From IMG/VR virus record IMGVR_UViG_3300033153_007973, positions 124,001 through 188,000 of that record: a stretch of 64,000 nt of DNA; one strand, written 5' to 3'. The translations under genes and the position numbers were made by a program. Below, piece after piece: positions 8,931 through 57,126 of this stretch; position 1 is the stretch's first letter, and each line of letters begins with the position of its first letter. A model generated the notes under the pieces. It made no database searches, was not told where the DNA came from, and saw only the letters and a program-made list of their open reading frames with translations.

Positions 8931-9962
8931 ATGGTACTTGCTGATATTCTTCTTTCTGATACTGGAGATATTGCATTCAATGGAGATCTCATAATCGTTG
9001 AAGGACTAAATCTAGTATACCAAAATATGCTACGATTTCTTCGTTCAGAAGCAGAAGACGTTCCAACTGATCCATCAATGGCATTTGGTATACGAGATTA
9101 TCTTGGCTTACCAAATACAAAGGCATCTGCAGAGATTATTAGAAGCGACTTTCTCGATAAGATCTCATTTCTAGATGCATTCAGTGAACATATTATTGAT
9201 GTTGATGTCTATCCGACTGATATCAAAGATCTAAAGATGGAAATAACCATAGAAGAACAAGACAATAAAGGAGAGTCTCTCGTTATCGCTGGAAATATTC
9301 TGATGAATAATGGATTTATACAGAATATTCCAGATAAGTTCAATTCAGATATATATGACACATCCAGTACAGTAACAATAATCGAGACAGTGACAATCAC
9401 TGAGAGAGACAATAAGATCAGAGTTAAATACAATCCAGATATCTCATCAGTTCTCGTATTTAATTCAACAGATGCTGTCACTGTTAATGAAGAAGATATT
9501 GTTACAAATCTACAAACTATCTCTGGTACGATTGTGATGGCACAGGAAGGAATAGACTATCCTTCTGGTACACTGGTTCCACAAGAGTTTCTATCGATAT
9601 CACTCGATGATGAGATTCCCATCTTAAAGGATGAGAAGATTATCCTATCATCATTTAGTGTGAGCGGAGTCACACTAACTAAAACAGGACTAGACCCATC
9701 ACCATATGAATATATTGAAGATAGCATAGATGGATTTGATCTTACATTTGGAGATACACACGAAGCATTAGGATATGTTATTGACTATGAAGATATTATC
9801 ATTAGAGCAACTGGTATCGTAGAAACCGAAAGAGAATTACCACCTCCTGAATATCTTGCTTTCTCTTTTGCTACCGAAAATGTAGTACATGATATTATAC
9901 TGGAAAGATATCTTAATCCAGGAACATATATTATACAATATAGAACAAGCCCATTATTATAG
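8931..9962 (+). CDS. Baseplate wedge/sheath initiator, gp25-like N-terminal domain with C-terminal extension
   Basis: N-terminus DILLSDTGDIAFNGDLIIVEG..LVYQNMLRFLRSE...DPSMAFGIRDYLG matches the gp25/DUF2634 pattern. Directly precedes the baseplate J-like gene. Confidence 0.7.
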   Translation: MVLADILLSDTGDIAFNGDLIIVEGLNLVYQNMLRFLRSEAEDVPTDPSMAFGIRDYLGLPNTKASAEIIRSDFLDKISFLDAFSEHIIDVDVYPTDIKDLKMEITIEEQDNKGESLVIAGNILMNNGFIQNIPDKFNSDIYDTSSTVTIIETVTITERDNKIRVKYNPDISSVLVFNSTDAVTVNEEDIVTNLQTISGTIVMAQEGIDYPSGTLVPQEFLSISLDDEIPILKDEKIILSSFSVSGVTLTKTGLDPSPYEYIEDSIDGFDLTFGDTHEALGYVIDYEDIIIRATGIVETERELPPPEYLAFSFATENVVHDIILERYLNPGTYIIQYRTSPLL

Positions 9963-9971
9963 GAGTAGGTC

Positions 9972-11111
9972 ATGGCTTTCAGTTTTCTCTCAGCGGAAGA
10001 TGTCACAGAAAGAATTATAGGGGAATGGCAAGCCTCAGGTATTATCAATACTGAGGATGCATCTGTATTAAGTCTCATAATGTACCCATTCCAGATAAGA
10101 ATCACAGATCTCTATGCAACTCTATTTGATATACATCAGTCACATAGAATATCTAGTGCATTTGGAATAGATCTAGATGAGATAGCCAGAGGGTTCGGTG
10201 TGATAAGAAAGACCAGTATACCAGCAGCGGACTATACATATGGCAACTTTAGATTCTATCTTCCAAATGAAATCACAGCAAAAGATTATACAATTGATAG
10301 AACAGGATTCGAAATTCCAGCTGGACAGAATGTCTCGGATGGTGTTACTAATTTCATTACATTAGATGCTGCGGTTTTCGATGCTGATTCCCATTCCGCA
10401 TTTGTAAGAATACAAGGAACAGACGCATCTGCACTTTATATTCCAGAGAATGCAATAACTGAACATCAAGTAACACCAGTAATTATATCTGAGATGGATC
10501 CCAACATAGAAGTAACAATATTATGCACAAATAACCAGCCCATAGAACTGGAATCCACTCTGGAGGATGATAACTCTCTACGAGATCGATTATATGACAG
10601 AGTAAACTCGAATGGCACAAATGATAGTGCGATCACATTCGCTCTGAAGACTTTAGGTATTCTAGATGCAGAATATGTAACAGATGCATTCGGGGTAGGA
10701 ACACTCGGTGTTAGATTAGTGACAGGAGAACCAATCATCTCTGACACCACTCTCGATGCCGCAGATGGTGTTATCAGATCTATTACTCCATATGCAAGAG
10801 TGATTCGATCAGAATATCTGGTAATAAAGATACAGTTACAATTGGATGTTGATGATGAAAGCATCATTGAAAGCACAAAGTCAGATGTTATGATTGTGAT
10901 CAAGGATTATATAGATGCGATCCCTTCCGGATCCCAACTAAATATAACAACACTTGATGAAACAATCGATAATGTTCCCAATGTAACTAGACATAATACT
11001 AGATGTCTCTTCCTTAACGAGAGACGATGTGTGTTATCTTCACAACGTTCTGCTTCTGACCAGAAGTTCATTATATCAAGAGAAGACGATGCTGTTATGT
11101 TCGTCTCATAA
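9972..11111 (+). CDS. Baseplate J-like wedge protein
   Basis: ISSAFGIDLDEIARGFGVIRK, EIPAGQNVSDG..F.T and EDDNSLRDRL motifs; 379 aa; AGGAG RBS. Confidence 0.85.
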   Translation: MAFSFLSAEDVTERIIGEWQASGIINTEDASVLSLIMYPFQIRITDLYATLFDIHQSHRISSAFGIDLDEIARGFGVIRKTSIPAADYTYGNFRFYLPNEITAKDYTIDRTGFEIPAGQNVSDGVTNFITLDAAVFDADSHSAFVRIQGTDASALYIPENAITEHQVTPVIISEMDPNIEVTILCTNNQPIELESTLEDDNSLRDRLYDRVNSNGTNDSAITFALKTLGILDAEYVTDAFGVGTLGVRLVTGEPIISDTTLDAADGVIRSITPYARVIRSEYLVIKIQLQLDVDDESIIESTKSDVMIVIKDYIDAIPSGSQLNITTLDETIDNVPNVTRHNTRCLFLNERRCVLSSQRSASDQKFIISREDDAVMFVS

Positions 11112-11120
11112 GGATAACGT

Positions 11121-13232
11121 GTGCCTAGATCAACTGCATCACTATTTACGAGTCAGATACTAAAAGATTGGCCTGGTTGGTCCGCAGCAAAGAGAGATCT
11201 AAACTCTTTTGCGCGTAGGATGATCAATCCATTCAGTCTACTATTAGATGATCTGGAACTAATGCTACCAGAACTCGAGCGAAGCTTGACGTTAGCAACT
11301 GCTGATCCAGATGCCTTTCCATACAAAGCATGGGTGTCTGATGAAGATGATATATCTAACCATCCAAATCAATATGGATCTTCAGATCAATATCTAAATG
11401 CTGTTGACTCAGTAAATGGAAATATCTCTGGTGTAGCAATCGGTATTACCGAAGTTACACCTGATAATTTCAGAATTGCAAATCCAACTGGATTCTTCGT
11501 CTCTGGATCACTCCCAATTGATAGCCTTGGATTATCTGGCGTCCCGCAAATGGGCGAGTATGACACTACAGCAGGAGAGTATCTAATAACGACCGTCTCT
11601 GGTGAACTATCCGGGGAAACCGTTGAGCCTTCATATGCACACGGCATTACAATACCAGAACAGTTTAGTAATATTGCAGAAGCTGAGCTTGGTCTCAGAA
11701 CATTTGTAGATCCAATGTATACTGATATAACTGTTGACTTTGAAGCTGCAATATCGGGTTCAAGAATGGTGCTAGATTATCATCTAGGATCTATGCCAAC
11801 TATAACCAGAACAATAGACAATGTTACTTCTGATGGAGAAGACTTAACGACCTGGACAAATACACAAGACTGGAAAACAGTATACGAGACCAGAGATGAT
11901 CTAGATAATGATGGTATCATAGATGCACGAGAAGAACAACTAATTATTCCACATCTTGGAATAAAGCGTTCTGATGACCCTGTCGCATGGGATGAATTGT
12001 ATGCACAATATGATCTCAATGGAGACGAAGTCATTGATGAACTAGATCTCCTCAGAGTACAAACTCTTGCTAATACAATAAGACCAGATGGTGGCGATAT
12101 CCTGGAATTCGGAGCAGCTGGTGCATATTCGATCACCTTCCAGATTCCAAGAGATGGATATGCTGGAACTACTTCATTCTATAGGAATGCAGTTGGTCCA
12201 GATGTGCGGATTGATTTATCAATGGAATCATTTAGGAACGAGACATTTGGACACTTGCTTACTAATTTTGACGAAGGGTATATTGATTCAGCATATGATC
12301 CATCACTTGGAGTATTCTATTACTTGGATGAAATAAATCGTTGCATCTGGGCAGTAAAATATGACGCAATTGGTATTAATAGAGATAAGTTTAAAATCAT
12401 CCTTCCCTATGAACACAAGAATACACAATTCCGCGGGATTACATATATCGATAATCTTATATATGTTCTAGTCATCATCAATGGAAAGACATGGATATAT
12501 CTCATTGAGACTAGTATATCTAATCCAGAAGCATCGCTTGTAAAGCTCCCAGTACATGCAGGAAACATTATGAATGGGGATCCAGATATTCGTATCAGGG
12601 ATGGAGAAGGTCTCTCGTCTGGCGTTACCTCTCTTGGTTCTATAGATTCAGATAGATTAATGACAATAGATGGTGATAATCTAAAGTTTCTTTATCCTCT
12701 TGTGGATGTCTATTCGAGAGATGTTAATGAACGAACGACTAAAAGCAACCTAGTGTTTAGAGAGAAATATGATTCTCTCACACCATATCCAGAAGCAACA
12801 ATGCTTCAAACATATTTCCATCTGTGGAATGTCTTCGATGAATACGCGCTCGAGCGCGGATTAGAGAGGCATCCAGGAGAGAACAATAGTAGTCTAAAAG
12901 AAACATGCTTAGATGTATATGATAATCCATGGACAATGGACCCACAGGGTATCCATTATGGAATCGCAAGATCTTTGAGATCATCACCATATATTATAAC
13001 TGATCCACTGACATATCGATTATCATCAGCACCGGCAAGTGAGCGAATCAGCGGAACACTCTTAAGACATAACGATGTTCCTGTATGGTGGGATACAATC
13101 ACTGAAGATAAGGTATATCGAGATAGCGCATATCTTTATTCAAAGTTTATGTTCTATTCAGGTGAAACAGAGATGTTTAGAATAGAGAATGATACATTAA
13201 AGGTGAATGAGGATGCACTTATATGGATCTAA
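11121..13232 (+). CDS. Baseplate wedge protein (tail I/gp7-like C-terminal domain) with dockerin-like EF-hand pair
   Basis: HLWNVFDEYALERGLERHPGENNSSLK...GIARSL resembles tail-I-like wedge motifs. Two Ca-loop-like motifs, DLDNDGIIDARE and DLNGDEVIDELD. Follows baseplate J. Confidence 0.6.
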   Translation: MPRSTASLFTSQILKDWPGWSAAKRDLNSFARRMINPFSLLLDDLELMLPELERSLTLATADPDAFPYKAWVSDEDDISNHPNQYGSSDQYLNAVDSVNGNISGVAIGITEVTPDNFRIANPTGFFVSGSLPIDSLGLSGVPQMGEYDTTAGEYLITTVSGELSGETVEPSYAHGITIPEQFSNIAEAELGLRTFVDPMYTDITVDFEAAISGSRMVLDYHLGSMPTITRTIDNVTSDGEDLTTWTNTQDWKTVYETRDDLDNDGIIDAREEQLIIPHLGIKRSDDPVAWDELYAQYDLNGDEVIDELDLLRVQTLANTIRPDGGDILEFGAAGAYSITFQIPRDGYAGTTSFYRNAVGPDVRIDLSMESFRNETFGHLLTNFDEGYIDSAYDPSLGVFYYLDEINRCIWAVKYDAIGINRDKFKIILPYEHKNTQFRGITYIDNLIYVLVIINGKTWIYLIETSISNPEASLVKLPVHAGNIMNGDPDIRIRDGEGLSSGVTSLGSIDSDRLMTIDGDNLKFLYPLVDVYSRDVNERTTKSNLVFREKYDSLTPYPEATMLQTYFHLWNVFDEYALERGLERHPGENNSSLKETCLDVYDNPWTMDPQGIHYGIARSLRSSPYIITDPLTYRLSSAPASERISGTLLRHNDVPVWWDTITEDKVYRDSAYLYSKFMFYSGETEMFRIENDTLKVNEDALIWI

Positions 13233-15307
13233 GTGGACATATTATACTTGAGTATCTGGTAAAGAACAATTCTGAGTTCCAGAATGCTGCCGCAGGTTTC
13301 GATTTCCATGCCGGAATAGATAGCTTGGATTCTATCCCTGATGTAGAAAGCCTCCTGGATGAGAATGGTGATCCAACTCAAGAGCTATTAGATCTTCTCG
13401 CTAATCTCAGAGACGCTACACTTGGATATACTGATACAGATGCAGATCATATTCGTATACACTATTTGAATGATGAAGGATTTCTCTATAACGATGCTAA
13501 TGGTTTCTTCCTAAGTGGAGAACCTACAGCAAACATGACTGATCGGATTACAAGCCTTGAAGCTATTAATATATCTAACTGGGGACATATAAGAGCAGAT
13601 GAAAGCTGGTTAGATGCCAAAGACGTACGTTCAGGATTTACTAGAGTCTTCAATACATACTATGATAAATCTGGTGAGACAAACTCCGAAGCACGATGTG
13701 GAATAGGATTTGAAGATGATCTCAATATGATCAGGATCATGAACTTTGATCCTAATGATGTCATTGGACCAGGACAGTTCACGATTAGTGGTGATATACT
13801 CACTGGTTTAATTCGTGAACAATCAATTGATCATGGCAATATCTATAACTATGCTCCTGAATTACAGGATGGCTATCTATATCTGGATGGACAGGAAACA
13901 TATCTATATGGATCTAAGGTAACTGAGGTCTTCCCAGATCACATATCTGGTTCTGTATTATCAGGTACACCAAATGACTATGCTCCAATCATGATCAGAG
14001 TTGGAACCATAGATCCTCTGACGGCCGGATGCCAAAGTGGTCTCGTGTCTGGTCATCTGATCTTTGAGAGTGACCAATTCCATGATCATCACTCTGAAGA
14101 ATGGAATGATAATGTTACACCTCTATCTCCATTCCATAAAGCCGAAGGTTTGTCTAGAGTATATATCAGTGGTACTGAGATCGAGGATAGAGAGCTCTCT
14201 GGTAATCCTATCGCAACAAACTATTATGACCACAGTGGCACAGTACAGACAATAACCTCAGGCAGTTTAGTGGTTACATATGAAGAACTGGGTGAAGATA
14301 AATGTATTCTCCCAGATACTGATCTCTCTCCGCTGACATGGGAGGATGGAGATAGGATCTTTGCGATTCAGTCACAAGAGAAAGATCCATATAGCATTGC
14401 TGGGTATCTCACTCAGAGCGTGATCCAACCAGTAGTCTCTACAGAAGTAGTCTCTGGTGATACAAATCTTATACATGTCGTAGCTAATATACGCGATGAA
14501 GATGGCGCACCTCTCAGTGGTGTCATAGTCAGATTCGACATTGAGAAATACCTCGAGAACTTATCAGGTGACATAATATCATCTACACAATCACTTGATG
14601 AATATGAAGTTTTATCATATCCATCTGGAAACAGGGTAAGAAGCATCGAGCATAAGGCCATCCTTGATGAATCATATTCTGGGGATATATTTGACTCATA
14701 TCAGATCGGACTCTTCAGAGCGATCGAGGCAGTCCAGACATATGCAATGCCAGCCAGAGCATACTTCGATGTCTCTGGTGACATAGGCTTAGTCAAATAT
14801 GCTGAGACAGACATATTCGGAAGCGCTGAACTCCCAATCAGGATACATAACTTCAATAACTATACAACTGATAATGCAATCAGGCTATCCATCTCAGGAA
14901 CACCAACAATCTCAGACATCCTCAACTTTCGGATCCTGTCAGTTGGAACATCCATCGATGGATATGTTGATACACCAGTAGATGGGTTCTCTATACCTAA
15001 TATAGCTACAAAATTCCAGTATGTGGACTTCTCCGGAGCTACTCCAGAAATAGAGCTTAATACATACCCATACGGTGGCGAACAAATGGTGAGATTATAT
15101 ACTGCAACTGATTTCTCTGATGCGCACCATGTACCAGGACTGACCTCATTTTCTGAACCTTTGGTAACTGACAGAGGATCAGAACTGTGGTATGATGGGG
15201 AAGGTCATGCACATGTGACTTTCAATGCAGCACTAAGTGGTGGTTATGTTGGCTGGGAAATGCTAATTTCACACACAGCTGACCTAATTGGAGTAAATTA
15301 TGACTAA
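13223..15307 (+). CDS. Acidic baseplate/tail structural protein, Ser-Gly-rich, with Ig-like segment
   Basis: 694-aa ORF overlapping both neighbours. VVANIRDEDGAPLSGVIVRF is an Ig/invasin-like strand pattern. 22 SG dipeptides counted by eye. Confidence 0.6.
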   Translation: MDLSGHIILEYLVKNNSEFQNAAAGFDFHAGIDSLDSIPDVESLLDENGDPTQELLDLLANLRDATLGYTDTDADHIRIHYLNDEGFLYNDANGFFLSGEPTANMTDRITSLEAINISNWGHIRADESWLDAKDVRSGFTRVFNTYYDKSGETNSEARCGIGFEDDLNMIRIMNFDPNDVIGPGQFTISGDILTGLIREQSIDHGNIYNYAPELQDGYLYLDGQETYLYGSKVTEVFPDHISGSVLSGTPNDYAPIMIRVGTIDPLTAGCQSGLVSGHLIFESDQFHDHHSEEWNDNVTPLSPFHKAEGLSRVYISGTEIEDRELSGNPIATNYYDHSGTVQTITSGSLVVTYEELGEDKCILPDTDLSPLTWEDGDRIFAIQSQEKDPYSIAGYLTQSVIQPVVSTEVVSGDTNLIHVVANIRDEDGAPLSGVIVRFDIEKYLENLSGDIISSTQSLDEYEVLSYPSGNRVRSIEHKAILDESYSGDIFDSYQIGLFRAIEAVQTYAMPARAYFDVSGDIGLVKYAETDIFGSAELPIRIHNFNNYTTDNAIRLSISGTPTISDILNFRILSVGTSIDGYVDTPVDGFSIPNIATKFQYVDFSGATPEIELNTYPYGGEQMVRLYTATDFSDAHHVPGLTSFSEPLVTDRGSELWYDGEGHAHVTFNAALSGGYVGWEMLISHTADLIGVNYD

Positions 15308-49521: not shown

Positions 49522-49523
49522 TC

Positions 49524-50285: not shown

Positions 50286-50286
50286 C

Positions 50287-51573
50287 ATGCATGACATGAT
50301 ACTTATATATTTACCCCATCCATATCTCAATGAGCCCAACGCACAGGCACCCATGGGATTGCTAGCAGTAGGTGCTGTTCTTAAAGAGAACGATTATAAT
50401 ACTGTCGTGAAGAACTACTCCGCGTACTCTATAGATAATGCTATAAAGGATCTTCCAGAGTCTAGGGTCTATGGTATCACCGTGACAAGCCTCGAGCTAC
50501 TTGCAGCTAACAGGTTTGCCAAGAGGATCAAGCAGAAGTATCCTACATGTAACGTGATCCTGGGTGGCCCAGGCACATATGCGGATGAGTTCGTTGATAC
50601 TAATTATATAGACAGTATCTTAAAAGGTGAGGGTGACATAACATGCCTGGAAATGATGCGAGATATGGAGATCAACATCCTTAAACCAGTATACCATGGG
50701 AAACTTGTGACAGATCTAGATACTCTGCCATTTCCTGCTAGAGAGATGCTTGATGGGAATATGGGTGGAAATATCTTCGCATTCAAGAAACAGTACACTA
50801 ACGATGGTAAATCCACAATCCTGCTATCTTCCAGAGGCTGTCCCTTCAAGTGTGCATTCTGTTCTGCGCCTTCTTTCACTCACAACAGTAGGGTTCGACT
50901 CAGAAGTCCAAAGTCAATAGCGGATGAAGTCAAACAAGTCATAGATGAGTATGGTATACGACAGTTTAGGTTTTCTGATGACATGTTTACTGCTAATGCA
51001 AGACATGCTATAGAGGTTAGTAAGGAGCTCCAGAAGCTGGACATCTACTGGCGGGTATCGTGCCGAACCAAGCCACTATCAGAGGACATGCTTAAGGCCA
51101 TGTATGATGGCGGGTGTAAAGAGCTCTCATTTGGTGTAGAAAGTTTCGACGATGATGTCCTAAAGCTATTGGATAAGCGGGCAACATGTGCTGACAATGT
51201 CAGAGCGCTCGAACTCTCTCACAAGCTCAGGTTCACCACTCGAATCTTAATGATGATCAGGACACCTGGGCAAACACCCAAGACAATAGAGGATAACAAA
51301 CACTGGCTAACTAGGGTCCCCTACTCTATCATAGCATGCACCACCTTCGTGCCCATCCCCGGCTCTGATATATGGGACAATCCTGACAAATACAATGTAG
51401 AGATCCTTAACAAGAATCTTGATGACTACAACTTCTACTTCTTTGGACCCGGTGGAGAGAATGAACTAAAGCCCATCCTTAAGATCAAGGATCGTACACT
51501 AGAAGAGTTCCATGCTGAAACAATCGAGTTTCGAGACTGGCTGAAAGAACATACGCAAGTAAATAGAGGATAA
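50287..51573 (+). CDS. Cobalamin-binding radical SAM protein (class B-like)
   Basis: PMGLLAVGA and VILGGPG (B12 domain), SRGCPFKCAFC (CxxxCxxC), FSDDMF and FGVES. Start moved to ATG 50287 after AAGGA. Confidence 0.9.
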   Translation: MHDMILIYLPHPYLNEPNAQAPMGLLAVGAVLKENDYNTVVKNYSAYSIDNAIKDLPESRVYGITVTSLELLAANRFAKRIKQKYPTCNVILGGPGTYADEFVDTNYIDSILKGEGDITCLEMMRDMEINILKPVYHGKLVTDLDTLPFPAREMLDGNMGGNIFAFKKQYTNDGKSTILLSSRGCPFKCAFCSAPSFTHNSRVRLRSPKSIADEVKQVIDEYGIRQFRFSDDMFTANARHAIEVSKELQKLDIYWRVSCRTKPLSEDMLKAMYDGGCKELSFGVESFDDDVLKLLDKRATCADNVRALELSHKLRFTTRILMMIRTPGQTPKTIEDNKHWLTRVPYSIIACTTFVPIPGSDIWDNPDKYNVEILNKNLDDYNFYFFGPGGENELKPILKIKDRTLEEFHAETIEFRDWLKEHTQVNRG

Positions 51574-51577
51574 GATA

Positions 51578-52270
51578 ATGAAAAGCGTACTTGAAGAGAC
51601 ACAGCTAGAAAGAGATGAGGAACTGGGACCACTGATAGATATCCCACTAAGGTATGTGCAGCAGCTAGGCATTTGCACGCCAGATTCTATAAGAATCTAT
51701 GATGGTAGTGCTCCTATCCGTAATGAAGAGGACTATATAGATCTATATAAAGACTTCAAGAGTTTGGATTTTCATGCATACCTCAGGACTCTGATGTTTA
51801 CAAGTGTTGTTCGTAGAGGACACTATTTTAAAGATACCAAACATAAAGATAAAACATGCTTAGATTATGGTAGTGGTGTGGGAACACACACCATAGTCCT
51901 TCTAGAACGTGGTAACTATGTAGACATGATGGACATTAATGGACCTCTATTAAGATTTGCACATAGTCGTGTTCTAAAGCGTGGATATAAGACAAACATA
52001 CTATATTCTGACGCGGTTCTACAGGATGATCACTATGATATTGTCGTGTGTCTAGATGTCTTAGAACATGTATATGATCCCTATTCTGAATTGGTACGAT
52101 TGCACAAAGCTATGAAGAAGAATGCCATATTGATACTAGAAGTTAGTCTCAAGGTGAAAGAATCATCAGGACATTTCAAGAATAGCATTGATGTATGGGA
52201 GAGTAAAGGGTTAGCATTTCTACGTAAGCATTTCACTCGACAGAGCAATACCAGATGGGTGAAATCATGA
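51578..52270 (+). CDS. Class I SAM-dependent methyltransferase
   Basis: CLDYGSGVG, YDIVVCLDVLEHV. Confidence 0.9.
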   Translation: MKSVLEETQLERDEELGPLIDIPLRYVQQLGICTPDSIRIYDGSAPIRNEEDYIDLYKDFKSLDFHAYLRTLMFTSVVRRGHYFKDTKHKDKTCLDYGSGVGTHTIVLLERGNYVDMMDINGPLLRFAHSRVLKRGYKTNILYSDAVLQDDHYDIVVCLDVLEHVYDPYSELVRLHKAMKKNAILILEVSLKVKESSGHFKNSIDVWESKGLAFLRKHFTRQSNTRWVKS

Positions 52271-52767
52271 TAACAGCCAAACTCATCAAGGGTGCGCATT
52301 GTACTATCTCTCCAGAGTCACACATTGGATACAATGAACATGGTGGCGAGATTATTCTGGGCAATGGAACTAAGATCATGCATAACTGTATCATCCGTAC
52401 GTGTACAGGAACCATCCGCATGGGAAAACTTGTCAGTGTAGGATATAATACTATTATGCACGGACAGGGCGGCATCACCATTGGAGATTATGTTCTGATC
52501 AGTCCTGGAGTTCAAATACATGCACAGAACCACGGTATAAAACGCAATACTCTGATAAGAAACCAGCCAAACACACATAAAGGTATCAATATAGCAAATG
52601 ATGTATGGATAGGAGCATCAGCTATTATTACTGATGGAGTAAGCATAGGACAAGGTGCAGTAATCGGCGCCGGCGCTATTGTCACAAAAGATGTTCCTCA
52701 ATATGAAATATGGGCCGGGAATCCCGCCAAGAAGATAGGAGAAAGACATGAAGATACTGTACTTTAG
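52267..52767 (+). CDS. Hexapeptide-repeat O-acetyltransferase
   Basis: ITIGDYVLISPGV, IANDVWIGASAII.DGVSIGQGAVIGAGAIVTKDV, AGNPAK; ATGA overlap with the previous stop. Confidence 0.9.
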   Translation: MITAKLIKGAHCTISPESHIGYNEHGGEIILGNGTKIMHNCIIRTCTGTIRMGKLVSVGYNTIMHGQGGITIGDYVLISPGVQIHAQNHGIKRNTLIRNQPNTHKGINIANDVWIGASAIITDGVSIGQGAVIGAGAIVTKDVPQYEIWAGNPAKKIGERHEDTVL

Positions 52768-53650
52768 CGACCGGTATACATACAACAACTACGGCACAAA
52801 GCGCTCGATATTTGAAGAAGTTAAAAGCAGAGGAATAGATATAATCTGGATAGACACGTCACAAATGAACAAGATACTTCAGCTCATTAAGGAACACTCT
52901 CCAACAATGATATGGCTAGCCAGTTCAGCGCTGTTGCTCAGTCCTGCAGTGAAAGCAAAGATAAAGATACCCATTGTTGGATTTGGTTTCTCGGATCCCT
53001 ATTACTTCAAACCAGATCGGTTTAAGAGTTATGATCTATATGTCACCAACCATATAGGTACCTATGAGAAGTACAAGACTACCATTCCTATGCATTATAA
53101 CCAGACAGCATGTGATTTCAGGTATCATAAGGTAATGGATACACCCAAGAATATAGATGTATCAGTCATCGGACTGGGTACCCATCCATGGTTTCACGAC
53201 AAGCAAACAAGGATCAAATTCGTTAACAAATTACGATCAGAGACATCCTATAGAATACTAGCATTTGGTGCCCAATGGAATTCTCATCCCGAGAACCATG
53301 GATTTATTACTGGAGAGAAGTTTCTGCGCATTATCGGTAAGAGCCAGATAGGACTGGATGTGCAAGACGACTGGAGCCCACTGGCGCACCGCATGTTCGA
53401 GTATGCAGCATGTGGGGTACCTGTTATCACCAGAGCACGACCAGAAATTGCTATGGTGTTCAATGACAAGGAAATTATTACATATACCACATACAGCGAC
53501 ATCTTGTCCAAGTTAAACCACTATATGAAACATCCAGAGCAGCTAGCAGAGATTGGCAAGAGGGCACACGAACGATGTAAGAGACAACACAATATCAATT
53601 TCAGGGTGGACGGGATACTACAGTTTGTCAAGAAACACGAAGGAGACTAG
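52748..53650 (+). CDS. CgeB-like glycosyltransferase (GT-B)
   Basis: DVSVIG, SQIGLDV...HRMFEYAACG.PVIT, IGKRAHER...H....RV. Confidence 0.85.
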   Translation: MKILYFSDRYTYNNYGTKRSIFEEVKSRGIDIIWIDTSQMNKILQLIKEHSPTMIWLASSALLLSPAVKAKIKIPIVGFGFSDPYYFKPDRFKSYDLYVTNHIGTYEKYKTTIPMHYNQTACDFRYHKVMDTPKNIDVSVIGLGTHPWFHDKQTRIKFVNKLRSETSYRILAFGAQWNSHPENHGFITGEKFLRIIGKSQIGLDVQDDWSPLAHRMFEYAACGVPVITRARPEIAMVFNDKEIITYTTYSDILSKLNHYMKHPEQLAEIGKRAHERCKRQHNINFRVDGILQFVKKHEGD

Positions 53651-54205
53651 GTGCATATCCCTGAAGTATCTAAAGTAATCCATAATGCTGTCGCTTCATA
53701 TGTCAAGAAATATGATCCTTCTACTGTGTTGGATATTGGAGGATTCAGAAGACTGCAACAGTTTCTGACAGCCAAAGTAACTGATGCTAATATCAATAAT
53801 GGAATCGATGGCACGAACCTCCCATATAAAGATAACAGCTTCGATGTCACGACATCGATTGCTACGTTAGAACATGTGAACAACCAAGCGAAATTCATGT
53901 CGGAATCAATCAGAACAGCAAGGATTGCTTCCGTACACTGGTTCCCATTTGGACCTGATGGTCAACGGATAGAAGATCTTCTTAAAGGATATAATCATAA
54001 ACATGACTGTGTCGTTCCAAGTCTATCTATCTTCCTGGATCTCTTCAATCGATATGATTTCAGTGTCCATATGTATCCTAAATACAAAGACCACCTCAAG
54101 AATATGGCACACATAAAACCACAGATTATGAATAGCGATACTATGAGGTTCATTGAGAGATTTAGTTCGAGATCATATGGAATCATACTGGAGATAATCA
54201 AATGA
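53651..54205 (+). CDS. Type 11-like SAM-dependent methyltransferase
   Basis: VLDIGG, DGTNLPYKDNSFDV, ATLEHV. Confidence 0.75.
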   Translation: MHIPEVSKVIHNAVASYVKKYDPSTVLDIGGFRRLQQFLTAKVTDANINNGIDGTNLPYKDNSFDVTTSIATLEHVNNQAKFMSESIRTARIASVHWFPFGPDGQRIEDLLKGYNHKHDCVVPSLSIFLDLFNRYDFSVHMYPKYKDHLKNMAHIKPQIMNSDTMRFIERFSSRSYGIILEIIK

Positions 54206-54930
54206 AGATAAAGCTCTCCGGATATATGATCAGTTATAATGAGAAACCCATTATAAAGTTATCCATCATGAACTTACTACAGTTCGTTGATGAGTTAATC
54301 ATTACCGATGGAGAGAGTACCGACGGCACAGCAGAGCTTCTAGATAGAATGGCTAATAGATTTAGTAAGATCAAACTATATCCAATGCGACAGAGATATG
54401 GCAGAAAGAGAACTGTATCTGGTCGTGAAAGAACTGCCGATGGCTTTAATGAAATGGAACGTAGAACATATGCTATATCTAAGTGTTCGGGCACGCATAT
54501 ATTAATGAAAGATGTAGATGAATTGTATCACGAACACACGGATTTCCACAATCTGATAGAGAAGAATCCTGCATTTCTATCCTTTAGTCAGCTACAATAT
54601 GAAGTAGTGCCAGGAAATAAGTTCTTGCCTCATATACGAATCAATGGCCATCATAGTGTACCAAGACTTATTAAAAACACTCCAGATATAGTCTTCAAAG
54701 ATATACGTAACCTGAATGGAATTGATTGTTGTCTCTTTAGTAACAAGTATAACAAACGACTGGCAGATATCAAGGACATGGTTGGTGCATATAGTATGTG
54801 GCACTACAAAATGATGTTTGATAAGAAACAGCTATACAAGCACTACAAGAGCAAGGATCGGGCAACAAAGCCATTGTTAACATTTCCATCAGAACATAAT
54901 AAATTCATTGACATGGGCAGCTTAACGTGA
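54202..54930 (+). CDS. Glycosyltransferase family 2-like
   Basis: ISYNEK, VDELIITDGESTDGT, DxD motif KDVDE, MWHY. Confidence 0.85.
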   Translation: MKIKLSGYMISYNEKPIIKLSIMNLLQFVDELIITDGESTDGTAELLDRMANRFSKIKLYPMRQRYGRKRTVSGRERTADGFNEMERRTYAISKCSGTHILMKDVDELYHEHTDFHNLIEKNPAFLSFSQLQYEVVPGNKFLPHIRINGHHSVPRLIKNTPDIVFKDIRNLNGIDCCLFSNKYNKRLADIKDMVGAYSMWHYKMMFDKKQLYKHYKSKDRATKPLLTFPSEHNKFIDMGSLT

Positions 54931-55061
54931 TATTAGGGATAGTCATTGCATTCTGTGTTGGGCTGCTCGCTGGATGGGTACTGAGATTCTTTTGGATCAG
55001 GTGGCACTACAACAACTGTCGATTTGCACCTATAAGAAGTCTATTTGGAACAGAAGATTAA
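54927..55061 (+). CDS. Small single-pass membrane protein (not in ORF track)
   Basis: The GTG overlaps the upstream TGA (GTGA). Translates MILGIVIAFCVGLLAGWVLRFFWIRWHYNNCRFAPIRSLFGTED; its TAA overlaps the next RBS. Confidence 0.6.
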   Translation: MILGIVIAFCVGLLAGWVLRFFWIRWHYNNCRFAPIRSLFGTED

Positions 55062-55072
55062 AGGAGAATAAT

Positions 55073-55864
55073 ATGAAGATTGTTGCATGCTGGATTTGTT
55101 ACAACAACATTGTGACACTGCCCTACAGTATAGATGCTGTCTATGACCTAATAGATGAGCTAGTCATAGTAGATGGATCCTTTAAAGGAAAGAGGAGCAC
55201 TGATGGTACCTGGGAGTATCTACAGAAACTGAAGGCATCTTCCAAGAAGCCACTGCACATAGTGGCTTCTCAGATGGGGTCTCTCTTCAATAAGCACAAT
55301 GAACATGTGGATGTAACTGGTAACCATGACTCCAACTTATGGACATGGCAGATAGACTCGGATGAGATATATTCTGAGGCTAATGCGAAGGCAGTCAGTG
55401 AAGCTATTCGATCTGATAAATACAATGGCATCATTGTAAAGCTAATGAACATCGAACGATTTATAGATGGAAAGTTCTTCATAGCAAACAATCTTGATAG
55501 GATAGACACCAACCAAATGCGTGTATATCGCATGCATAAAGGTTTGAACTTCAAGACAAAAGACTCGATCTTTGAATGGATAGTATACGAGGATGGATCC
55601 GAGGTACAACGTGGTAACAATAAGATACATGCAAATAGTAAGACTCTAAGAGTGGACCACTATCACTGCCTCGCTACCGTGGAACAGGCGATTGCACGAT
55701 ATAACCACTATGGGAGCAATGATCCAGTTGGAACAGAAGCTAGGATCAGAAGCCCAGGAAACAGCACCGAAGAGATCAAAATGCATGCTCTTGCAACCAA
55801 ATGGTTGCCCGATACCATGACAAATAAAGAATACTATAAGGCTCTCAAGCCTTTCAAAGGATAA
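55073..55864 (+). CDS. Glycosyltransferase family 2-like
   Basis: IVACWICYNN, IDELVIVDGSF...STDGT, WQIDSDE. Start moved to ATG 55073 after AAGGAG. Confidence 0.85.
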   Translation: MKIVACWICYNNIVTLPYSIDAVYDLIDELVIVDGSFKGKRSTDGTWEYLQKLKASSKKPLHIVASQMGSLFNKHNEHVDVTGNHDSNLWTWQIDSDEIYSEANAKAVSEAIRSDKYNGIIVKLMNIERFIDGKFFIANNLDRIDTNQMRVYRMHKGLNFKTKDSIFEWIVYEDGSEVQRGNNKIHANSKTLRVDHYHCLATVEQAIARYNHYGSNDPVGTEARIRSPGNSTEEIKMHALATKWLPDTMTNKEYYKALKPFKG

Positions 55865-55867
55865 GCA

Positions 55868-56167
55868 ATGAAGAATACACTAGTGCCGTATTGGACTAAC
55901 GTAGACATGCAGGAACCTCACATAGCATTTGTGAGTAATTGGGAGCCATTTCCTACAGATGATATTGAGATCATCAACCAAAAACGTAAAGAAAATCCTG
56001 GGACGCCCATTTTGATCCTTATTAGGGACACTCGGATCAGAAAGGAAAATGTGCTTAAGAGAGCCGAGCCGATCATACAATGGATGAAGGATAAGGACAT
56101 CAAGGGATCAGTTATGATCATACCAGATGTCTGTGAGGTCCATGACTTAGATGAGGAGAGTATATGA
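55868..56167 (+). CDS. Degenerate cytidylyltransferase-like small protein
   Basis: AFVSNWEPF...ILILIRDT...IIPDV echoes the phage HxGH nucleotidyltransferase pattern (GRWQPxHxGH...IRD...IPD), but HxGH is absent. Confidence 0.4.
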   Translation: MKNTLVPYWTNVDMQEPHIAFVSNWEPFPTDDIEIINQKRKENPGTPILILIRDTRIRKENVLKRAEPIIQWMKDKDIKGSVMIIPDVCEVHDLDEESI

Positions 56168-57126
56168 TGAATCTGCACCTAGTTCCAACTCTTAAGAAGA
56201 AGTGCGGAATAGCCGAGTTTGCCAAAGGACTGAACTCTTATCTTAACATGGAGATAAATGATTCAGTCATTATTTCTCCAGATGTTATCTTACTAGAACA
56301 TGAGTACGCATATGATGGTGATTGTTGGGAACAAATAGAAGTGCTGCGTCCTAAAACCTTTATTTACATGCACTCTGTAAATCTTACCAATCCGAACAAC
56401 CAGATCACTCACAGAAAGATCAACGAGTTATGTGAGGGTGTGTTTGTCTCCACTGAGATCATGAAATCAAAACTCGCTCAGGTTATTACTATTCCTATCT
56501 ATGTAATACAGCACTACTCTGAACCTATCACAGACTCTCCAGACGAGACAAAAGCAGAGAACATTTTCACTATTGGGATGCATGGCTTTGCTGTCCCCAG
56601 AACATGTCTTATCAGAGGCATCATGGAGCTGGGATATAATCTAGATATGCATCTTCATATCGTAAGCACTATTAATGACGTAACTCTGAAACACTTCCAG
56701 ATCTCTAAATCATATCTGGATAGGTGCAGGAGTGTTTGCCGGCGTCAGGGTTTCGAAGATAGAGTTACATTCGATTTTAATTATTACAAAGACAAATCCG
56801 ACATCATTAAAGCACTGAACAAGAAGTGTGACATGATCCTTCTCGTTCAGGCTGATGGTGGTGATACGTACAATGCAAGCGGCACTGCCCGCGTTGCATT
56901 AGCAAGCGGGCGGCCTGTTGTGGTGCCAAGCTATCCTCAATTTGATGGTCTTCCAGAAGGTGTTGTCTATCGTATGAAGGACAACTATAGAGACAGCATC
57001 AGAGAGGTCATAGAAGACCCTCAGAAGGTAATTAACTCAATTGACATACGAAAGGTTATAGAGTATACTGAAGAGACCAGCCCGGCCAACACCGCGGCAA
57101 AGATCAAGGAAATCATGGGGATATAA
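56164..57126 (+). CDS. Glycosyltransferase family 4-like (GT-B)
   Basis: KCGIAEF, LEHEY, IGMHGF, NASGTARVALASGRPVVV; paralogous to the second domain of 60095..62836. Confidence 0.8.
   Translation: MMNLHLVPTLKKKCGIAEFAKGLNSYLNMEINDSVIISPDVILLEHEYAYDGDCWEQIEVLRPKTFIYMHSVNLTNPNNQITHRKINELCEGVFVSTEIMKSKLAQVITIPIYVIQHYSEPITDSPDETKAENIFTIGMHGFAVPRTCLIRGIMELGYNLDMHLHIVSTINDVTLKHFQISKSYLDRCRSVCRRQGFEDRVTFDFNYYKDKSDIIKALNKKCDMILLVQADGGDTYNASGTARVALASGRPVVVPSYPQFDGLPEGVVYRMKDNYRDSIREVIEDPQKVINSIDIRKVIEYTEETSPANTAAKIKEIMGI

What the first reader, a model, noticed from the sequence alone, without database searches (positions are those of the whole stretch)
8931..57126. Candidate phage-encoded, Ser-Gly-directed O-glycosylation system that coats the tail
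Seen: SG dipeptides, usually [I/V/L/A/T]-S-G-[E/D/H/A/T] in acidic context, are dense in outer structural proteins. Manual counts: 22 in 694 aa (13223..), 11 in 278 (37316..), 20 in 560 (38153..), about 45 in 1714 (39835..), 12 in 803 (34332..) and 9 in 703 (11121..). The 2585-aa hub has only about a dozen, and the chaperones and enzymes very few. Directly downstream lies a 14-gene operon of apparently soluble glycosyltransferases and sugar-tailoring enzymes, with no flippase or polymerase. Established: acidic Ser-Gly is the acceptor for proteoglycan O-xylosylation in animals, and some mycobacteriophages O-glycosylate virion proteins on Ser with their own GTs. Inference: this phage builds a pyruvylated, methylated and acetylated glycan on many Ser-Gly sites per virion, for shielding or adhesion. 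I know of no described SG-directed system in phages.
Basis: partly seen in the sequence, partly recalled or inferred. Interest (0 to 1): 0.92.

Follow-up and report, generated by a model that had tools for sequence, protein, structure and literature searches.

The report
Ser-Gly-rich phage tail beside glycosyltransferases
In an uncultured 234-kb phage, several outer tail proteins carry three to four times more Ser-Gly pairs than chance allows and sit next to a block of soluble sugar-adding enzymes; the excess is real, old and recurs in a second phage, but nobody has shown that the serines carry sugars.

Summary
Observation confirmed. Ser-Gly (SG) is the most over-represented dipeptide in four tail proteins (100 found, 29 expected, z 14.7). 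Thr-Gly, Asn-Gly and Asp-Gly are not enriched. The 2585-aa hub, the enzymes and 25 T4 tail proteins show no excess. The excess is old: both Ser codon families are used, and the fibre repeats are only 60-79% identical in DNA. The rare 694-aa baseplate-protein family keeps 11-25 SG per protein down to 21% identity, except one member. SG sits at beta-turns: hydrophobic residues at -1 and +3, and Asp-Gly or Asn-Gly in relatives. Downstream lie 13 co-oriented ORFs without membrane segments: GT4/GT2 enzymes, a pyruvyl transferase, methyltransferases, a B12-radical-SAM enzyme and an acetyltransferase. The lead GT4 belongs to a rare family closest to chlorovirus and giant-virus enzymes. A second, unrelated phage region (L027) has homologous GT4 and pyruvyl-transferase genes beside two tail fibres with 38 and 27 SG (z about 10). 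Against: a complete phage genome without any glycosyltransferase has an SG-rich fibre (z 5), and Gly is kept more often than Ser. There is no direct evidence of glycosylation. My estimates: SG-directed tail glycosylation about 0.4; SG purely structural, summed over its variants, about 0.4.

The parts
8931..9962 (+). 343-aa baseplate protein (orthologue in L013 has a weak GPW_gp25 hit)
   Evidence: SG 3 vs 1.4 here. Its orthologues are SG-rich: z 4.6 in L013 and z 3.0 in L025.
9972..11111 (+). Baseplate J-like protein, not SG-rich (anchor for synteny)
   Evidence: Pfam Baseplate_J, E 2.3e-7. SG 2 vs 1.5.
11121..13232 (+). 703-aa peripheral baseplate protein, moderately SG-rich
   Evidence: SG 9 vs 3.7, z 3.0. 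Orthologues: z 4.0 (L013) and z 2.5 (L025).
13223..15307 (+). 694-aa baseplate/tail protein of a rare family; the strongest SG excess outside repeats
   Evidence: SG 22 vs 5.3, z 7.8. The family has 16 members among 1.84 billion representatives. Of 14 aligned members, 13 have z 4-8.9. Ser in SG is invariant at 13 of 22 sites, other Ser at 9 of 39 (p 0.0066).
26802..30218 (+). 1138-aa tail protein with a Laminin_G_3 domain, mild SG excess
   Evidence: SG 13 vs 6.7, z 2.7. Pfam hit.
32224..33234 (+). 336-aa protein, SG excess
   Evidence: SG 8 vs 2.8, z 3.4.
34332..36743 (+). 803-aa fibre-like protein with a Laminin_G_3 domain; carries one DLWSAxxISG module
   Evidence: SG 12 vs 7.1, z 2.1.
37316..38152 (+). 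278-aa tail fibre protein built of SG-containing modules
   Evidence: SG 11 vs 2.9, z 5.2. Modules.
38153..39835 (+). 560-aa tail fibre: Mtd_N / HylP-like N-terminus, then two copies of a roughly 185-aa super-repeat of SG modules with HxH motifs
   Evidence: SG 20 vs 4.8, z 7.6. Mtd_N E 2.3e-15. 763 homologues, many carrying Pfam PTR.
39835..44979 (+). 1714-aa tail fibre/spike with the same modules and a right-handed beta-helix domain
   Evidence: SG 47 vs 16.2, z 8.7. Beta_helix E 5.8e-11.
44979..46406 (+). 475-aa Laminin_G_3 + NHL beta-propeller protein, no SG excess
   Evidence: Pfam hits. SG 6 vs 4.0.
46406..46966 (+). 186-aa DUF4376 protein, the last gene before the enzyme block
   Evidence: Pfam hit. 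A homologue lies in L017.
47045..48178 (+). GT4 glycosyltransferase, first gene of the enzyme block; member of a rare virus-type family
   Evidence: Pfam hits. 43 homologues among 5.8 billion proteins. AlphaFold2 pLDDT 92. Closest structures are chlorovirus B736L and giant-virus GTs.
48175..49521 (+). Two GT2 glycosyltransferases (217 and 229 aa)
   Evidence: Pfam Glycos_transf_2, E 5e-8 and 9e-9. No TM segment.
49524..50285 (+). Polysaccharide pyruvyl transferase
   Evidence: PF04230, E 8e-12. Homologues in LR756500.1 (47%), Lak megaphages, Cobetia phage Carin-5 and L027 (37%).
50254..51573 (+). B12-binding radical SAM enzyme (C- or P-methyltransferase-like)
   Evidence: Pfam Radical_SAM E 1.6e-23, plus a weaker B12-binding hit (24.4 bits, below Pfam's cut-off of 32.1). 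NCBIfam hits all fall below their family cut-offs.
51578..52767 (+). SAM methyltransferase (230 aa) and hexapeptide acetyltransferase (170 aa)
   Evidence: Pfam hits.
52748..53650 (+). Glyco_trans_1_2 (CgeB-like) glycosyltransferase
   Evidence: PF13524, E 6.7e-25.
53651..55864 (+). SAM methyltransferase (184 aa), GT2 (242 aa) and a weak GT2-like protein (296 aa)
   Evidence: Pfam hits.
55868..57126 (+). 99-aa ORF and a 320-aa protein of unknown fold that travels with the GT4
   Evidence: ORFs. The 320-aa protein has a 29%-identical homologue next to the GT4 homologue in L017.
60095..62836 (-). 913-aa protein with two GT4-like regions, a conserved partner of the GT4
   Evidence: Pfam and NCBIfam hits. 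Homologue in L017: 26% over 869 aa. Its only PDB hit is chlorovirus B736L.

Best explanation
SHOWN.
- The window is the tail module of a 234-kb uncultured phage.
- Three peripheral baseplate proteins and the tail fibres use Ser-Gly at their beta-turns far more often than composition predicts.
- The fibre genes are followed on the same strand by a block of soluble enzymes: GT4, GT2s, a CgeB-like GT, a pyruvyl transferase, two SAM methyltransferases, a B12-radical-SAM enzyme and an acetyltransferase.
- A 320-aa protein and a 913-aa double GT lie nearby and travel with the GT4 in a relative.

INFERRED (most likely model, about 0.4).
- The block works in the cytoplasm on host NDP-sugars.
- One transferase, with the conserved GT4 or the 913-aa protein as candidates, puts a first sugar on the exposed turn serine of hydrophobic-Ser-Gly-x-hydrophobic motifs in newly made tail proteins.
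- The other transferases extend the glycan, and the tailoring enzymes pyruvylate, methylate and acetylate it.
- The baseplate rim and fibres would then leave the cell coated with many small acidic glycans, for shielding, stability or adhesion.

SG is in any case a structural turn motif. The model adds that Ser is preferred there because it is the acceptor.
For: 1. SG is Ser- and Gly-specific, extreme, and limited to outer tail proteins. T4 shows nothing comparable.
2. It is kept at the protein level. Ser codons at SG are AGY 40 / TCN 60, against 73/131 for other Ser. The fibre repeats are only 60-79% identical in DNA.
3. In the rare 694-aa family, 13 of the 14 aligned members have SG z 4-8.9 (11-22 SG each) down to 21% identity, although only 20-42% of SG columns are shared at that distance. 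The four weaker matches that were not aligned also score z 5.0-7.4, with up to 25 SG. The same three orthologues are SG-rich in the distant syntenic relatives L013 and L025.
4. The one SG-poor member (P0131) comes from a phage whose tail module ends without any GT in the 32 kb seen.
5. SG lies in loops. All 9 SG sites in the moderately confident half of the model are outside strands (p 0.003), with hydrophobic residues at -1 and +3.
6. No enzyme has a TM segment, and there are no export genes.
7. The GT4 family is rare (43 members). Its nearest structures are a chlorovirus GT (E 1e-9 by profile, 3.6e-16 by fold) and giant-virus GTs with TM 0.74-0.82. Mimivirus fibril glycan clusters combine GTs, a pyruvyltransferase, a methyltransferase and an acetyltransferase (PMC10117803).
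8. Independent recurrence. Of 626 ORFs in the 80 loci found with the GT4 profile, the only two with SG z above 5 are two tail fibres in L027 (38 vs 10.5 and 27 vs 6.1). They lie 2.5-5 kb from homologues of both the GT4 and the pyruvyl transferase. The homologous repeats in other phages use Ala-Gly, Asp-Gly or Thr-Gly instead. L016 also has the GT4 next to fibre-like genes, with z 3.9.
9. Precedent. TibC heptosylates Ser, not Thr, of a beta-helical repeat protein in the cytoplasm, and one mapped site is followed by Gly-Gly (PMC4358343).
Against: - There is no direct evidence that any protein here is glycosylated.
- In the 694-aa family, Gly is retained twice as often as Ser when SG changes (294 vs 153). 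Ser is replaced by Asp 88, Asn 46, Ala 39 and Thr only 27 times. That is the pattern of a beta-turn, not of an S/T acceptor.
- 50 of 90 SGs in the four fibre proteins fall in six repeated modules.
- In 119 homologous fibres the dipeptide before HxH is TG, AS, SS or SG in similar numbers.
- Terrisporobacter phage TVCOM_ph1 has an SG-rich fibre (z 5.0). No GT is annotated or found in its complete genome.
- SG-enriched PTR fibres P0008 and P0003 have no GT in the flanks available.
- GT4 relatives also occur beside replication genes with a full NDP-sugar pathway (L018), and in bacterial multi-GT proteins of polysaccharide type.
- A published reading of jumbo-phage GT clusters is host surface remodelling (PMC7824862).
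- The 694-aa model is poor (pLDDT 55.7).
Confidence: 0.4

Rival explanations
1. SG is only a structural beta-turn motif: a small residue plus Gly between two short strands. It is multiplied by fibre repeats and by a lineage habit, and carries no modification. The enzyme block remodels host envelope polysaccharide from the cytoplasmic side, using the host's lipid carrier, flippase and polymerase, for example to block superinfection or mask receptors.
For: - SG is exchanged for DG, NG or AG, and Gly is better kept than Ser.
- Half of the fibre SGs lie in repeated modules.
- Homologous fibre repeats use TG, AS, SS or AG.
- A GT-less phage has an SG-rich fibre.
- The enzyme set (GT4, GT2, pyruvyl transferase, hexapeptide acetyltransferase) is what exopolysaccharide loci contain, and those GTs are soluble too (my own knowledge of colanic-acid-type loci).
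- Cellular relatives of the GT4 are multi-GT proteins, and one locus holds a Capsule_synth protein.
- The jumbo-phage review proposes this role for such clusters (PMC7824862).
Against: - It does not explain why Ser, rather than the usual Asn or Asp, fills about 20 separate turns in a non-repetitive protein family over deep divergence.
- It does not explain why the only z>5 proteins among 626 ORFs lie beside homologous GT4 and pyruvyl-transferase genes.
- The block has no priming transferase, flippase or polymerase.
- The GT4 and its two partners look inherited along with the tail genes rather than sporadically gained.
- The nearest structural relatives are viral, not cellular.
Confidence: 0.2
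2. The enzyme block does glycosylate virion proteins, but at sites other than SG, for example terminal Ser/Thr-rich tails as in mycobacteriophages, or capsid proteins outside this window. The SG excess is an unrelated structural feature.
For: - The block lies within the tail module and is soluble.
- Its GT4 has viral relatives.
- The known phage case places glycans on the C-termini of capsid and tail-tube subunits (as summarised in PMC12619734).
- SG behaves like a turn motif.
Against: - It needs the SG-rich fibres of L027 to lie beside the homologous enzymes by coincidence.
- No Ser/Thr-rich terminal tails were noticed in the tail proteins read here, though I did not search for them systematically.
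- The capsid genes are outside the window.
Confidence: 0.15
3. The enzyme block hypermodifies phage DNA with a glycan, and has nothing to do with tail proteins.
For: - Phage GT arrays that glycosylate DNA exist (Pyle et al. 2024, cited in PMC12619734).
- In Cobetia phage Carin-5 the pyruvyl-transferase homologue sits among nucleotide-metabolism genes.
- The GT4 homologue in L018 sits beside helicase and dUTPase genes.
Against: - The block follows late structural genes on the same strand, with no detectable terminator in between.
- No base-hydroxymethylase or DNA-GT family was found in the window.
- I know of no pyruvylated, acetylated and methylated multi-GT glycan on DNA (my own knowledge).
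Confidence: 0.05
4. SG is a recognition motif for something other than a glycosyltransferase: another modification, an assembly chaperone, or a chemically stable replacement for deamidation-prone Asn-Gly and Asp-Gly turns in a long-lived virion.
For: - SG density is maintained while positions turn over in the 694-aa family.
- DG and NG are the main alternatives at these positions.
- DG is mildly depleted in the four proteins: 26 vs 35.2.
Against: - NG is not depleted: 16 vs 17.1.
- No candidate enzyme for another modification is evident.
- It does not explain the recurrence beside the GT4 and pyruvyl-transferase genes in L027.
Confidence: 0.05

Closest known systems
Virion glycosylation in mycobacteriophages (Freeman et al. 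2023, Cell Host Microbe; not held in the library, known here through PMC12619734, and my own knowledge)
   Same: Phage-encoded soluble glycosyltransferases would decorate the phage's own structural proteins in the cytoplasm, probably to shield them.
   Different: There the glycans sit on the C-termini of capsid and tail-tube subunits. Here the candidates are internal turn serines in baseplate and fibre proteins, at tens of sites per chain. The enzyme set is much larger and includes pyruvyl, methyl and acetyl tailoring. No chemistry exists for this phage.
Bacterial autotransporter heptosyltransferases (TibC/AAH acting on TibA/AIDA-I; PMC4358343)
   Same: Many serines, not threonines, of a beta-rich repeat protein are O-glycosylated in the cytoplasm. 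One mapped TibA site is a Ser followed by Gly-Gly.
   Different: Those enzymes are heptosyltransferases that use ADP-heptose and add single sugars. The window's enzymes gave no heptosyltransferase-type hit, and the predicted product is a tailored oligosaccharide.
Giant-virus glycosylation: Mimivirus/Megavirinae fibril glycan clusters (PMC10117803) and chlorovirus GT B736L (PDB 3oy2)
   Same: The clusters combine GTs, a pyruvyltransferase, a methyltransferase and an acetyltransferase and decorate virion fibrils. The window's GT4 is closest in sequence profile and fold to chlorovirus B736L and to Klosneuvirus- and Megaviridae-type GTs.
   Different: Those are eukaryotic viruses. Their clusters also make the nucleotide sugars, and the acceptor motif is not SG. 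The window's block has no sugar-nucleotide synthesis genes.
Phage tail fibre repeats with HxH motifs (Pfam PTR, PF12789) and the A-x-G-A-V type fibre repeat (PHROG 892)
   Same: The window's fibres are homologous to PTR-bearing fibres (E down to 6e-59) and share the small-small-HxHDxxYY unit. The L027 fibres belong to PHROG tail-fibre families.
   Different: The Pfam PTR model does not match the window's fibres even at E 5. Relatives use TG, AS, SS or AG where these phages use SG almost throughout.
Proteoglycan O-xylosylation at acidic Ser-Gly in animals
   Same: The acceptor is a Ser followed by Gly with acidic neighbours. Here E and D are enriched at +2 and -2.
   Different: No GT14-type xylosyltransferase domain is present. 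The animal sites lie in disordered regions of the secretory pathway, not in cytoplasmic beta-turns. This is an analogy of motif only.

Membership tests
Pfam PTR (PF12789) phage tail repeat | Match to the family HMM at or above its gathering score | tested here: not met
   No PTR hit for the three fibres even at E 5, whereas homologue P0014 scores 7.5e-20. Relatedness is shown only by pairwise HMMER hits to PTR-bearing proteins.
Pfam PTR (PF12789) phage tail repeat | Tandem units with an HxH(D/N)xxYY core preceded by two small residues | tested here: met
   There are 9 HxH units in the 560-aa fibre, 6 of them preceded by SG. The 119 homologues show TG 172, AS 159, SS 145 and SG 113 at that position.
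Phage virion glycosylation (mycobacteriophage type) | Phage-encoded soluble glycosyltransferases | tested here: met
   There are 5-6 GT-domain proteins plus the 913-aa double GT. None has a TM-like segment.
Phage virion glycosylation (mycobacteriophage type) | Glycans chemically demonstrated on virion proteins | not testable with these tools
   This is a metagenomic contig (JGI 3300033153). No virions and no proteomics exist.
Bacterial autotransporter heptosyltransferase system (TibC/AAH) | A heptosyltransferase-type (TibC/AAH-like) enzyme | tested here: not met
   Pfam and NCBIfam scans of the operon proteins, the 648-aa protein (57126..59072) and the 913-aa protein give only GT4, GT2 and Glyco_trans_1_2 hits.
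Bacterial autotransporter heptosyltransferase system (TibC/AAH) | Acceptor serines in short loops between short beta-strands of a repeat protein | tested here: inconclusive
   All 9 SG sites in the better half of a weak model lie outside strands, and -1 and +3 are hydrophobic. No trimer model or solvent exposure could be computed.
Proteoglycan xylosyltransferase system | GT14-type xylosyltransferase | tested here: not met
   No such domain among the window's proteins.
Giant-virus fibril/capsid glycosylation clusters | Cluster combining GTs with pyruvyl, methyl and acetyl transferases | tested here: met
   compared with the Mimivirus cluster described in PMC10117803.
Giant-virus fibril/capsid glycosylation clusters | Nucleotide-sugar synthesis genes inside the cluster | tested here: not met
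   No dehydratase, epimerase, aminotransferase or nucleotidyltransferase in 47045..59072. The relative L018 does have them.
Giant-virus fibril/capsid glycosylation clusters | GTs related to giant-virus GTs | tested here: met
   The GT4 profile hits chlorovirus B736L at E 1e-9. Foldseek gives E 3.6e-16 to 3oy2 and E 8e-30 / TM 0.82 to a Hyperionvirus GT.
Wzx/Wzy- or ABC-dependent polysaccharide locus; Gtr-type seroconversion | Membrane priming transferase, flippase, polymerase or transporter (or GtrA/B/C) | tested here: not met
   The highest 19-residue hydropathy among the operon proteins is 1.43, and none has a TM-like segment. There are no such Pfam hits. Host-supplied components cannot be excluded.
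Phage DNA glycosylation | Base hydroxymethylase plus DNA glycosyltransferase | tested here: inconclusive
   Nothing of the kind lies in the 64-kb window. The other 170 kb of the contig could not be read.

The most novel reading that the evidence does not exclude
A beta-turn Ser-Gly sequon is read by a virus-type glycosyltransferase module: the GT4, its 913-aa double-GT partner and variable tailoring enzymes. The module coats the baseplate rim and tail fibres with tens of pyruvylated, methylated and acetylated O-glycans per chain. The arrangement would be inherited through a lineage of freshwater jumbo phages and arise again in an unrelated phage (L027), where Ala-Gly fibre repeats have become Ser-Gly. 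That would be the first sequon-directed, tail-wide glycan coat described in a bacteriophage.
Probability: 0.35. Interest if true: 0.85.

Novelty: new variant of a known kind. Interest (0 to 1): 0.68.

Why it matters
If the serines are acceptors, this would extend phage virion glycosylation in three ways. It would move it from a few C-terminal sites in actinobacteriophages to a dense coat on receptor-binding organelles. It would supply a simple sequence rule (a turn Ser-Gly) for predicting glycosylated phage proteins from sequence alone. And it would link tailed-phage and giant-virus glycosylation enzymes.

A glycan-coated tail would bear on host recognition, resistance to proteases and antibodies, and adhesion to mucus or particles. 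The enzymes could become tools for cytoplasmic glycoengineering.

If the serines are not acceptors, the finding still defines two things. One is a rare family of baseplate proteins that has kept an unexplained fourfold SG excess over deep time. The other is a conserved three-gene glycosyltransferase core in an undescribed jumbo-phage lineage.

Tried and rejected
- **Composition or chance.** Rejected by shuffles and by the all-dipeptide scan.
- **Recent DNA duplication or a nucleotide motif.** Rejected. The repeats are 60-79% identical, and all six Ser codons are used in normal proportion.
- **A general property of tail fibres.** Rejected as a full explanation. T4 reaches at most z 1.9, and only 16% of 120 homologous fibres exceed z 3.
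- **Paralogy of the 703- and 694-aa proteins.** Not supported (BLASTP E 0.83).
- **Near relatives in phage collections.** None were found by DNA. IMG/VR holds only the same phage twice. The single metagenome scan returned only the P0131 phage again.
- **Pyruvyl-transferase neighbourhoods.** LR756500.1 and Cobetia phage Carin-5 show no fibres and no SG excess, so they are uninformative.
- **Structure of the 694-aa protein.** The model is weak (pLDDT 55.7). Its fold search gave only generic tandem beta-sandwich matches above E 0.01, and I did not use it.
- **PDB searches.** The fibre repeat (P0050) and the CgeB-like GT gave no hit. The GT4 alone gave none either; only its family profile did.
- **Promoter and terminator scan of 44000-60500.** Counts were at shuffle level, so it says nothing about transcription units.
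- **Diversity-generating retroelement** (suggested by the Mtd_N domain). Considered and dropped. SG sites are spread over whole proteins, not confined to a C-terminal variable region.
- **Freeman et al. 2023.** The paper could not be read.
- **Fibre repeats of animal viruses.** I kept this as a named analogy only and used no sequence.
- **Co-occurrence at scale.** This could not be done.

Full report
**What the window is.** The window corresponds to about 124-188 kb of a 234,008-bp metagenomic contig, JGI 3300033153 Ga0366824_1000008, also held as IMGVR_UViG_3300033153_007973. It has no near relative among 50,697 phage records. Nearly all long ORFs run on the + strand. In order they are:
- a 2585-aa hub or tape-measure-like protein with an endolysin-like stretch;
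- a baseplate set that includes a Baseplate_J-like protein;
- a long series of tail proteins;
- three fibre proteins (37316..44979);
- a lectin/NHL protein and a DUF4376 protein;
- a block of enzymes (47045..57126).

- SG found versus expected from composition is 22/5.3, 11/2.9, 20/4.8 and 47/16.2 in the four strongest proteins. Shuffle z scores are 7.8, 5.2, 7.6 and 8.7. The Poisson tail for the four together is 5e-25.
- In a scan of all 400 dipeptides, SG is by far the top outlier (100 vs 28.9, z 14.7). TG, AG, NG, DG and GS are at expectation, and SS and SD are depleted.
- The remaining structural proteins show a milder excess (91 vs 58.7). The hub (12 vs 13.5) and the enzymes (12 vs 10.6) show none.
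- Twenty-five T4 structural proteins, including gp34, gp37, gp12 and gp7, reach at most z 1.9.
- The context is hydrophobic at -1, E/D/H/A/T at +2 and hydrophobic at +3.

**Not a recent or nucleotide-level artefact.** Ser at SG uses AGY 40 times and TCN 60 times, the same proportion as other serines (73/131). The fibre repeats are only 60-79% identical at the DNA level.

**Anatomy in the fibres.** Fifty of the 90 SGs in the four fibre-type proteins fall in six recurring peptide modules:
- DLWSAxxI-SG (11 of 11 copies carry SG);
- HRxIND-SG-Y (6 of 11);
- SG-E[LI]HR (5 of 6);
- P-x-SG-ExLxY[ND]G;
- SG-HxH (10 of 21);
- SG-[AT][VMA]xxHE (13 of 15).

The sites are therefore not independent, yet several different modules have SG.

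The fibres are homologous to a large family of phage fibres (763 hits, E down to 6e-59), many of which carry Pfam PTR. The Pfam model itself does not match the window's fibres. In 119 homologues the two residues before HxH are TG 172, AS 159, SS 145 and SG 113. Only 16% of these proteins have an SG z above 3. This phage has therefore pushed a 'small residue, then small residue or Gly' position almost entirely to SG.

**Anatomy in the baseplate proteins.** The 694-aa protein is not repetitive and belongs to a rare family, with 16 hits among 1.84 billion representatives.
- Its two close homologues (53-54% identical by BLASTP) are equally SG-rich. Ser within SG is invariant at 13 of 22 sites, against 9 of 39 for other serines (p 0.0066).
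- Of 14 aligned members, 13 have z 4-8.9, down to 21% identity. The weaker hits P0135-P0138 are also SG-rich.
- At 19-27% identity only 20-42% of SG columns are shared, yet the counts stay at 13-22. Alignment error at that distance may exaggerate this turnover.
- Two distant syntenic relatives, L013 and L025 (roughly 23-35% protein identity over window 114..24895), show the same pattern. The orthologues of 13223, 11121 and 8931 are SG-rich and their neighbours are not.
- One member, P0131, has lost nearly all SG (3 sites, z 1.3). Its sisters have SG where it has LN, MA, DQ, DN or NG.

**Where SG sits in the fold.** The model of the 694-aa protein is weak overall (pLDDT 55.7). Its C-terminal half is a moderately confident all-beta region. 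All nine SG serines there lie outside strands, seven of them within three residues of a strand end (p 0.003).

When SG changes in the family, Gly is kept 294 times and Ser 153 times. Ser is replaced by Asp 88, Asn 46, Ala 39 and Thr 27 times. These are beta-turn positions. That is compatible with an exposed acceptor loop, but it is also what a purely structural motif predicts.

**The enzyme block.** Thirteen + strand ORFs lie between 47045 and 57126. Searches identify:
- a GT4;
- two GT2s;
- a pyruvyl transferase;
- a B12-binding radical SAM enzyme;
- a SAM methyltransferase;
- a hexapeptide acetyltransferase;
- a Glyco_trans_1_2 protein;
- a second methyltransferase;
- a third GT2 and a weak GT2-like protein;
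- a 99-aa ORF;
- a 320-aa protein of unknown family.

None has a TM-like segment. There is no flippase, polymerase, priming transferase or nucleotide-sugar pathway. A 913-aa protein with two GT4-like regions lies on the other strand (60095..62836). The promoter and terminator scan was at background level.

**The GT4 family is rare and virus-like.** Only 43 homologues turned up among 5.8 billion proteins; 42 come only from metagenome collections and one is also held by NCBI.
- Its profile hits chlorovirus NY-2A B736L (3oy2) at E 1e-9, well ahead of other GT4 structures.
- A confident model (pLDDT 92) is closest to the same entry in the PDB (E 3.6e-16). Among predicted viral structures it is closest to Hyperionvirus, Terrestrivirus and Megaviridae GTs (TM 0.74-0.82, E to 8e-30).
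- The 913-aa protein's only PDB hit is also 3oy2.
- Mimivirus fibril glycan clusters combine GTs, a pyruvyltransferase, a methyltransferase and an acetyltransferase (PMC10117803).

**A conserved core.** In L017 the GT4 (43% identical) sits with homologues of the 320-aa protein (29%), the 913-aa protein (26% over 869 aa) and a DUF4376-like protein.

L017 comes from the same sample as L025, the syntenic SG-rich relative. Their GC contents are 32.9% and 31.9%, and their tetranucleotide correlation is 0.71. They may be parts of one genome, but this is not proven.

Elsewhere the GT4 has different partners:
- fibre-like and Laminin_G_3 genes followed by GT2 and GT4 in L016, where one neighbour has SG z 3.9;
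- replication genes with a full amino-sugar pathway in L018.

**The co-occurrence test.** From the fibre side:
- The closest PTR-type homologue (P0002) and two SG-enriched ones (P0008, P0003) have no GT in the flanks available.
- The SG-poor P0131 phage (137-kb contig) was read from 19 to 51 kb. Its tail module ends and is followed by sigma-like, methylase and primase-helicase genes, with no GT.

From the enzyme side, I scanned one genome per species with the GT4 family profile and obtained 80 loci. Of 626 ORFs in them, only two exceed SG z 5. Both lie in L027, a 40.7-kb, 57% GC contig binned as Candidatus Fraserbacteria. They have 38 SG against 10.5 expected, and 27 against 6.1. They are tail fibres (PHROG 892, E 3.8e-27). 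They lie 2.5-5 kb downstream of a GT4-GT2 fusion (33% identical to the window's GT4), a pyruvyl transferase (37% identical to the window's) and another GT4. Fibre-like genes lie upstream as well.

Their repeat is of the A-S-G-A-V type. The homologous repeats use Ala, Asp or Thr before Gly in DSS3_VP1, Paracoccus phage Pkon1, Arthrobacter phage Mimi and cyanophage P-GSP1, whose SG z ranges from -0.1 to 1.8.

One counter-example exists. Terrisporobacter phage TVCOM_ph1 has the Ser form (14 vs 4.2, z 5.0). Its complete 41.5-kb genome has no GT by annotation or by Pfam scans of its large unassigned proteins.

**Weighing.** The structural reading accounts for the turn location, the Asp/Asn/Ala exchanges, the repeat modules and the GT-less SG-rich fibre. 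It does not account for these points:
- Ser rather than Asn or Asp fills about twenty separate turns of a non-repetitive family over deep time.
- One lineage dropped SG wholesale.

The glycosylation reading accounts for those points and has mechanistic precedent. TibC heptosylates Ser, not Thr, of a beta-helical repeat protein in the cytoplasm, and one mapped site is followed by Gly-Gly (PMC4358343). It rests on adjacency and a handful of loci, with no chemistry.

A published alternative for jumbo-phage GT clusters is remodelling of the host surface (PMC7824862). The cellular relatives of the GT4 are multi-GT proteins of polysaccharide type.

My estimates:
- SG serines are acceptors of this module: about 0.4.
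- SG is only structural and the module acts on the host envelope: 0.2.
- SG is only structural and the module acts on other virion sites: 0.15.
- The module acts on DNA: 0.05.
- SG is read by something else: 0.05.
- The remainder is unknown.

**Novelty and verdict.** Virus-encoded virion glycosylation is known in mycobacteriophages, chloroviruses and mimiviruses. Cytoplasmic multi-site Ser glycosylation of beta-repeat proteins is known in bacteria. My literature searches found no phage system aimed at a Ser-Gly turn motif or coating tail fibres. The finding is a real, unusual and testable pattern. I class it as a new variant of a known kind if the model is right. If it is wrong, what remains is an unexplained sequence signature next to an ordinary-looking but rare glycan module.

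Noticed in passing
window 30512-31798 (+): An SbcD-like exonuclease or phosphoesterase gene (PHROG 284, E 1.9e-49; weak Metallophos_2 hit) sits in the middle of the tail-protein gene run.
   Followed up: no
window 114-7871 (+): The 2585-aa hub or tape-measure-like protein has an endolysin-like stretch near residues 2194-2264 (PHROG 20474) and two hydrophobic segments. It is 34-35% identical to the corresponding giant proteins in L013 and L025.
   Followed up: partly
window 38153-39835 (+), residues 1-54 and 447-557: The N-terminus matches Mtd_N and the N-terminus of streptococcal phage hyaluronidases (6x3m, E 7e-4). The C-terminal domain is 33% identical to a stretch of the 634-kb uncultured phage LR745206.1.
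   Followed up: no
window 26802-30218, 34332-36743, 44979-46406 (+): Three tail proteins carry Laminin_G_3 (concanavalin-like lectin) domains, and one of them adds NHL beta-propeller repeats. They are possible carbohydrate-binding receptor binders.
   Followed up: no
window 11121-13232 (+), residues 260-314: A weak dockerin-like (calcium-binding repeat) hit, E 8e-4 and below the Pfam cut-off.
   Followed up: no
window 49524-50285 (+) and loci L004, L005: The pyruvyl transferase has homologues in Lak megaphages of Prevotella (34-38% identical), a 462-kb uncultured phage (47%) and Cobetia phage Carin-5. In Carin-5 it lies among nucleotide-metabolism genes, which hints that this enzyme family has more than one kind of target in phages.
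   Followed up: partly
L019/L021/L024 (ENA ERZ27262694 k141_574475, 137 kb; JGI Ga0256914 contigs): This is a smaller relative of the lineage. Its copy of the 694-aa family protein (P0131) has lost nearly all SG, and its tail module is followed directly by sigma-like, methylase and primase-helicase genes.
   Followed up: partly
L018 (JGI 3300033148 Ga0366832_1000782): A phage contig from the same sampling project as the window has two copies of the GT4 family beside a complete amino-sugar pathway (nucleotidyltransferase, dehydratases, DegT aminotransferase, acetyltransferase) and replication genes.
   Followed up: no
L107 28077-29958 (-) (Terrisporobacter phage TVCOM_ph1): Two proteins annotated as hypothetical are a HEPN (RiboL-PSP) protein and a GmrSD_N-domain protein. 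They are a likely defence pair carried by this temperate phage.
   Followed up: no
window 39835-44979 (+) residues 264-370, and L027 8798-9922: Both have weak Phage_cement_2 hits (E 0.014 and 1.7e-4, below the Pfam cut-off). This may be a shared small domain in fibre-associated proteins of the two GT-bearing loci.
   Followed up: no
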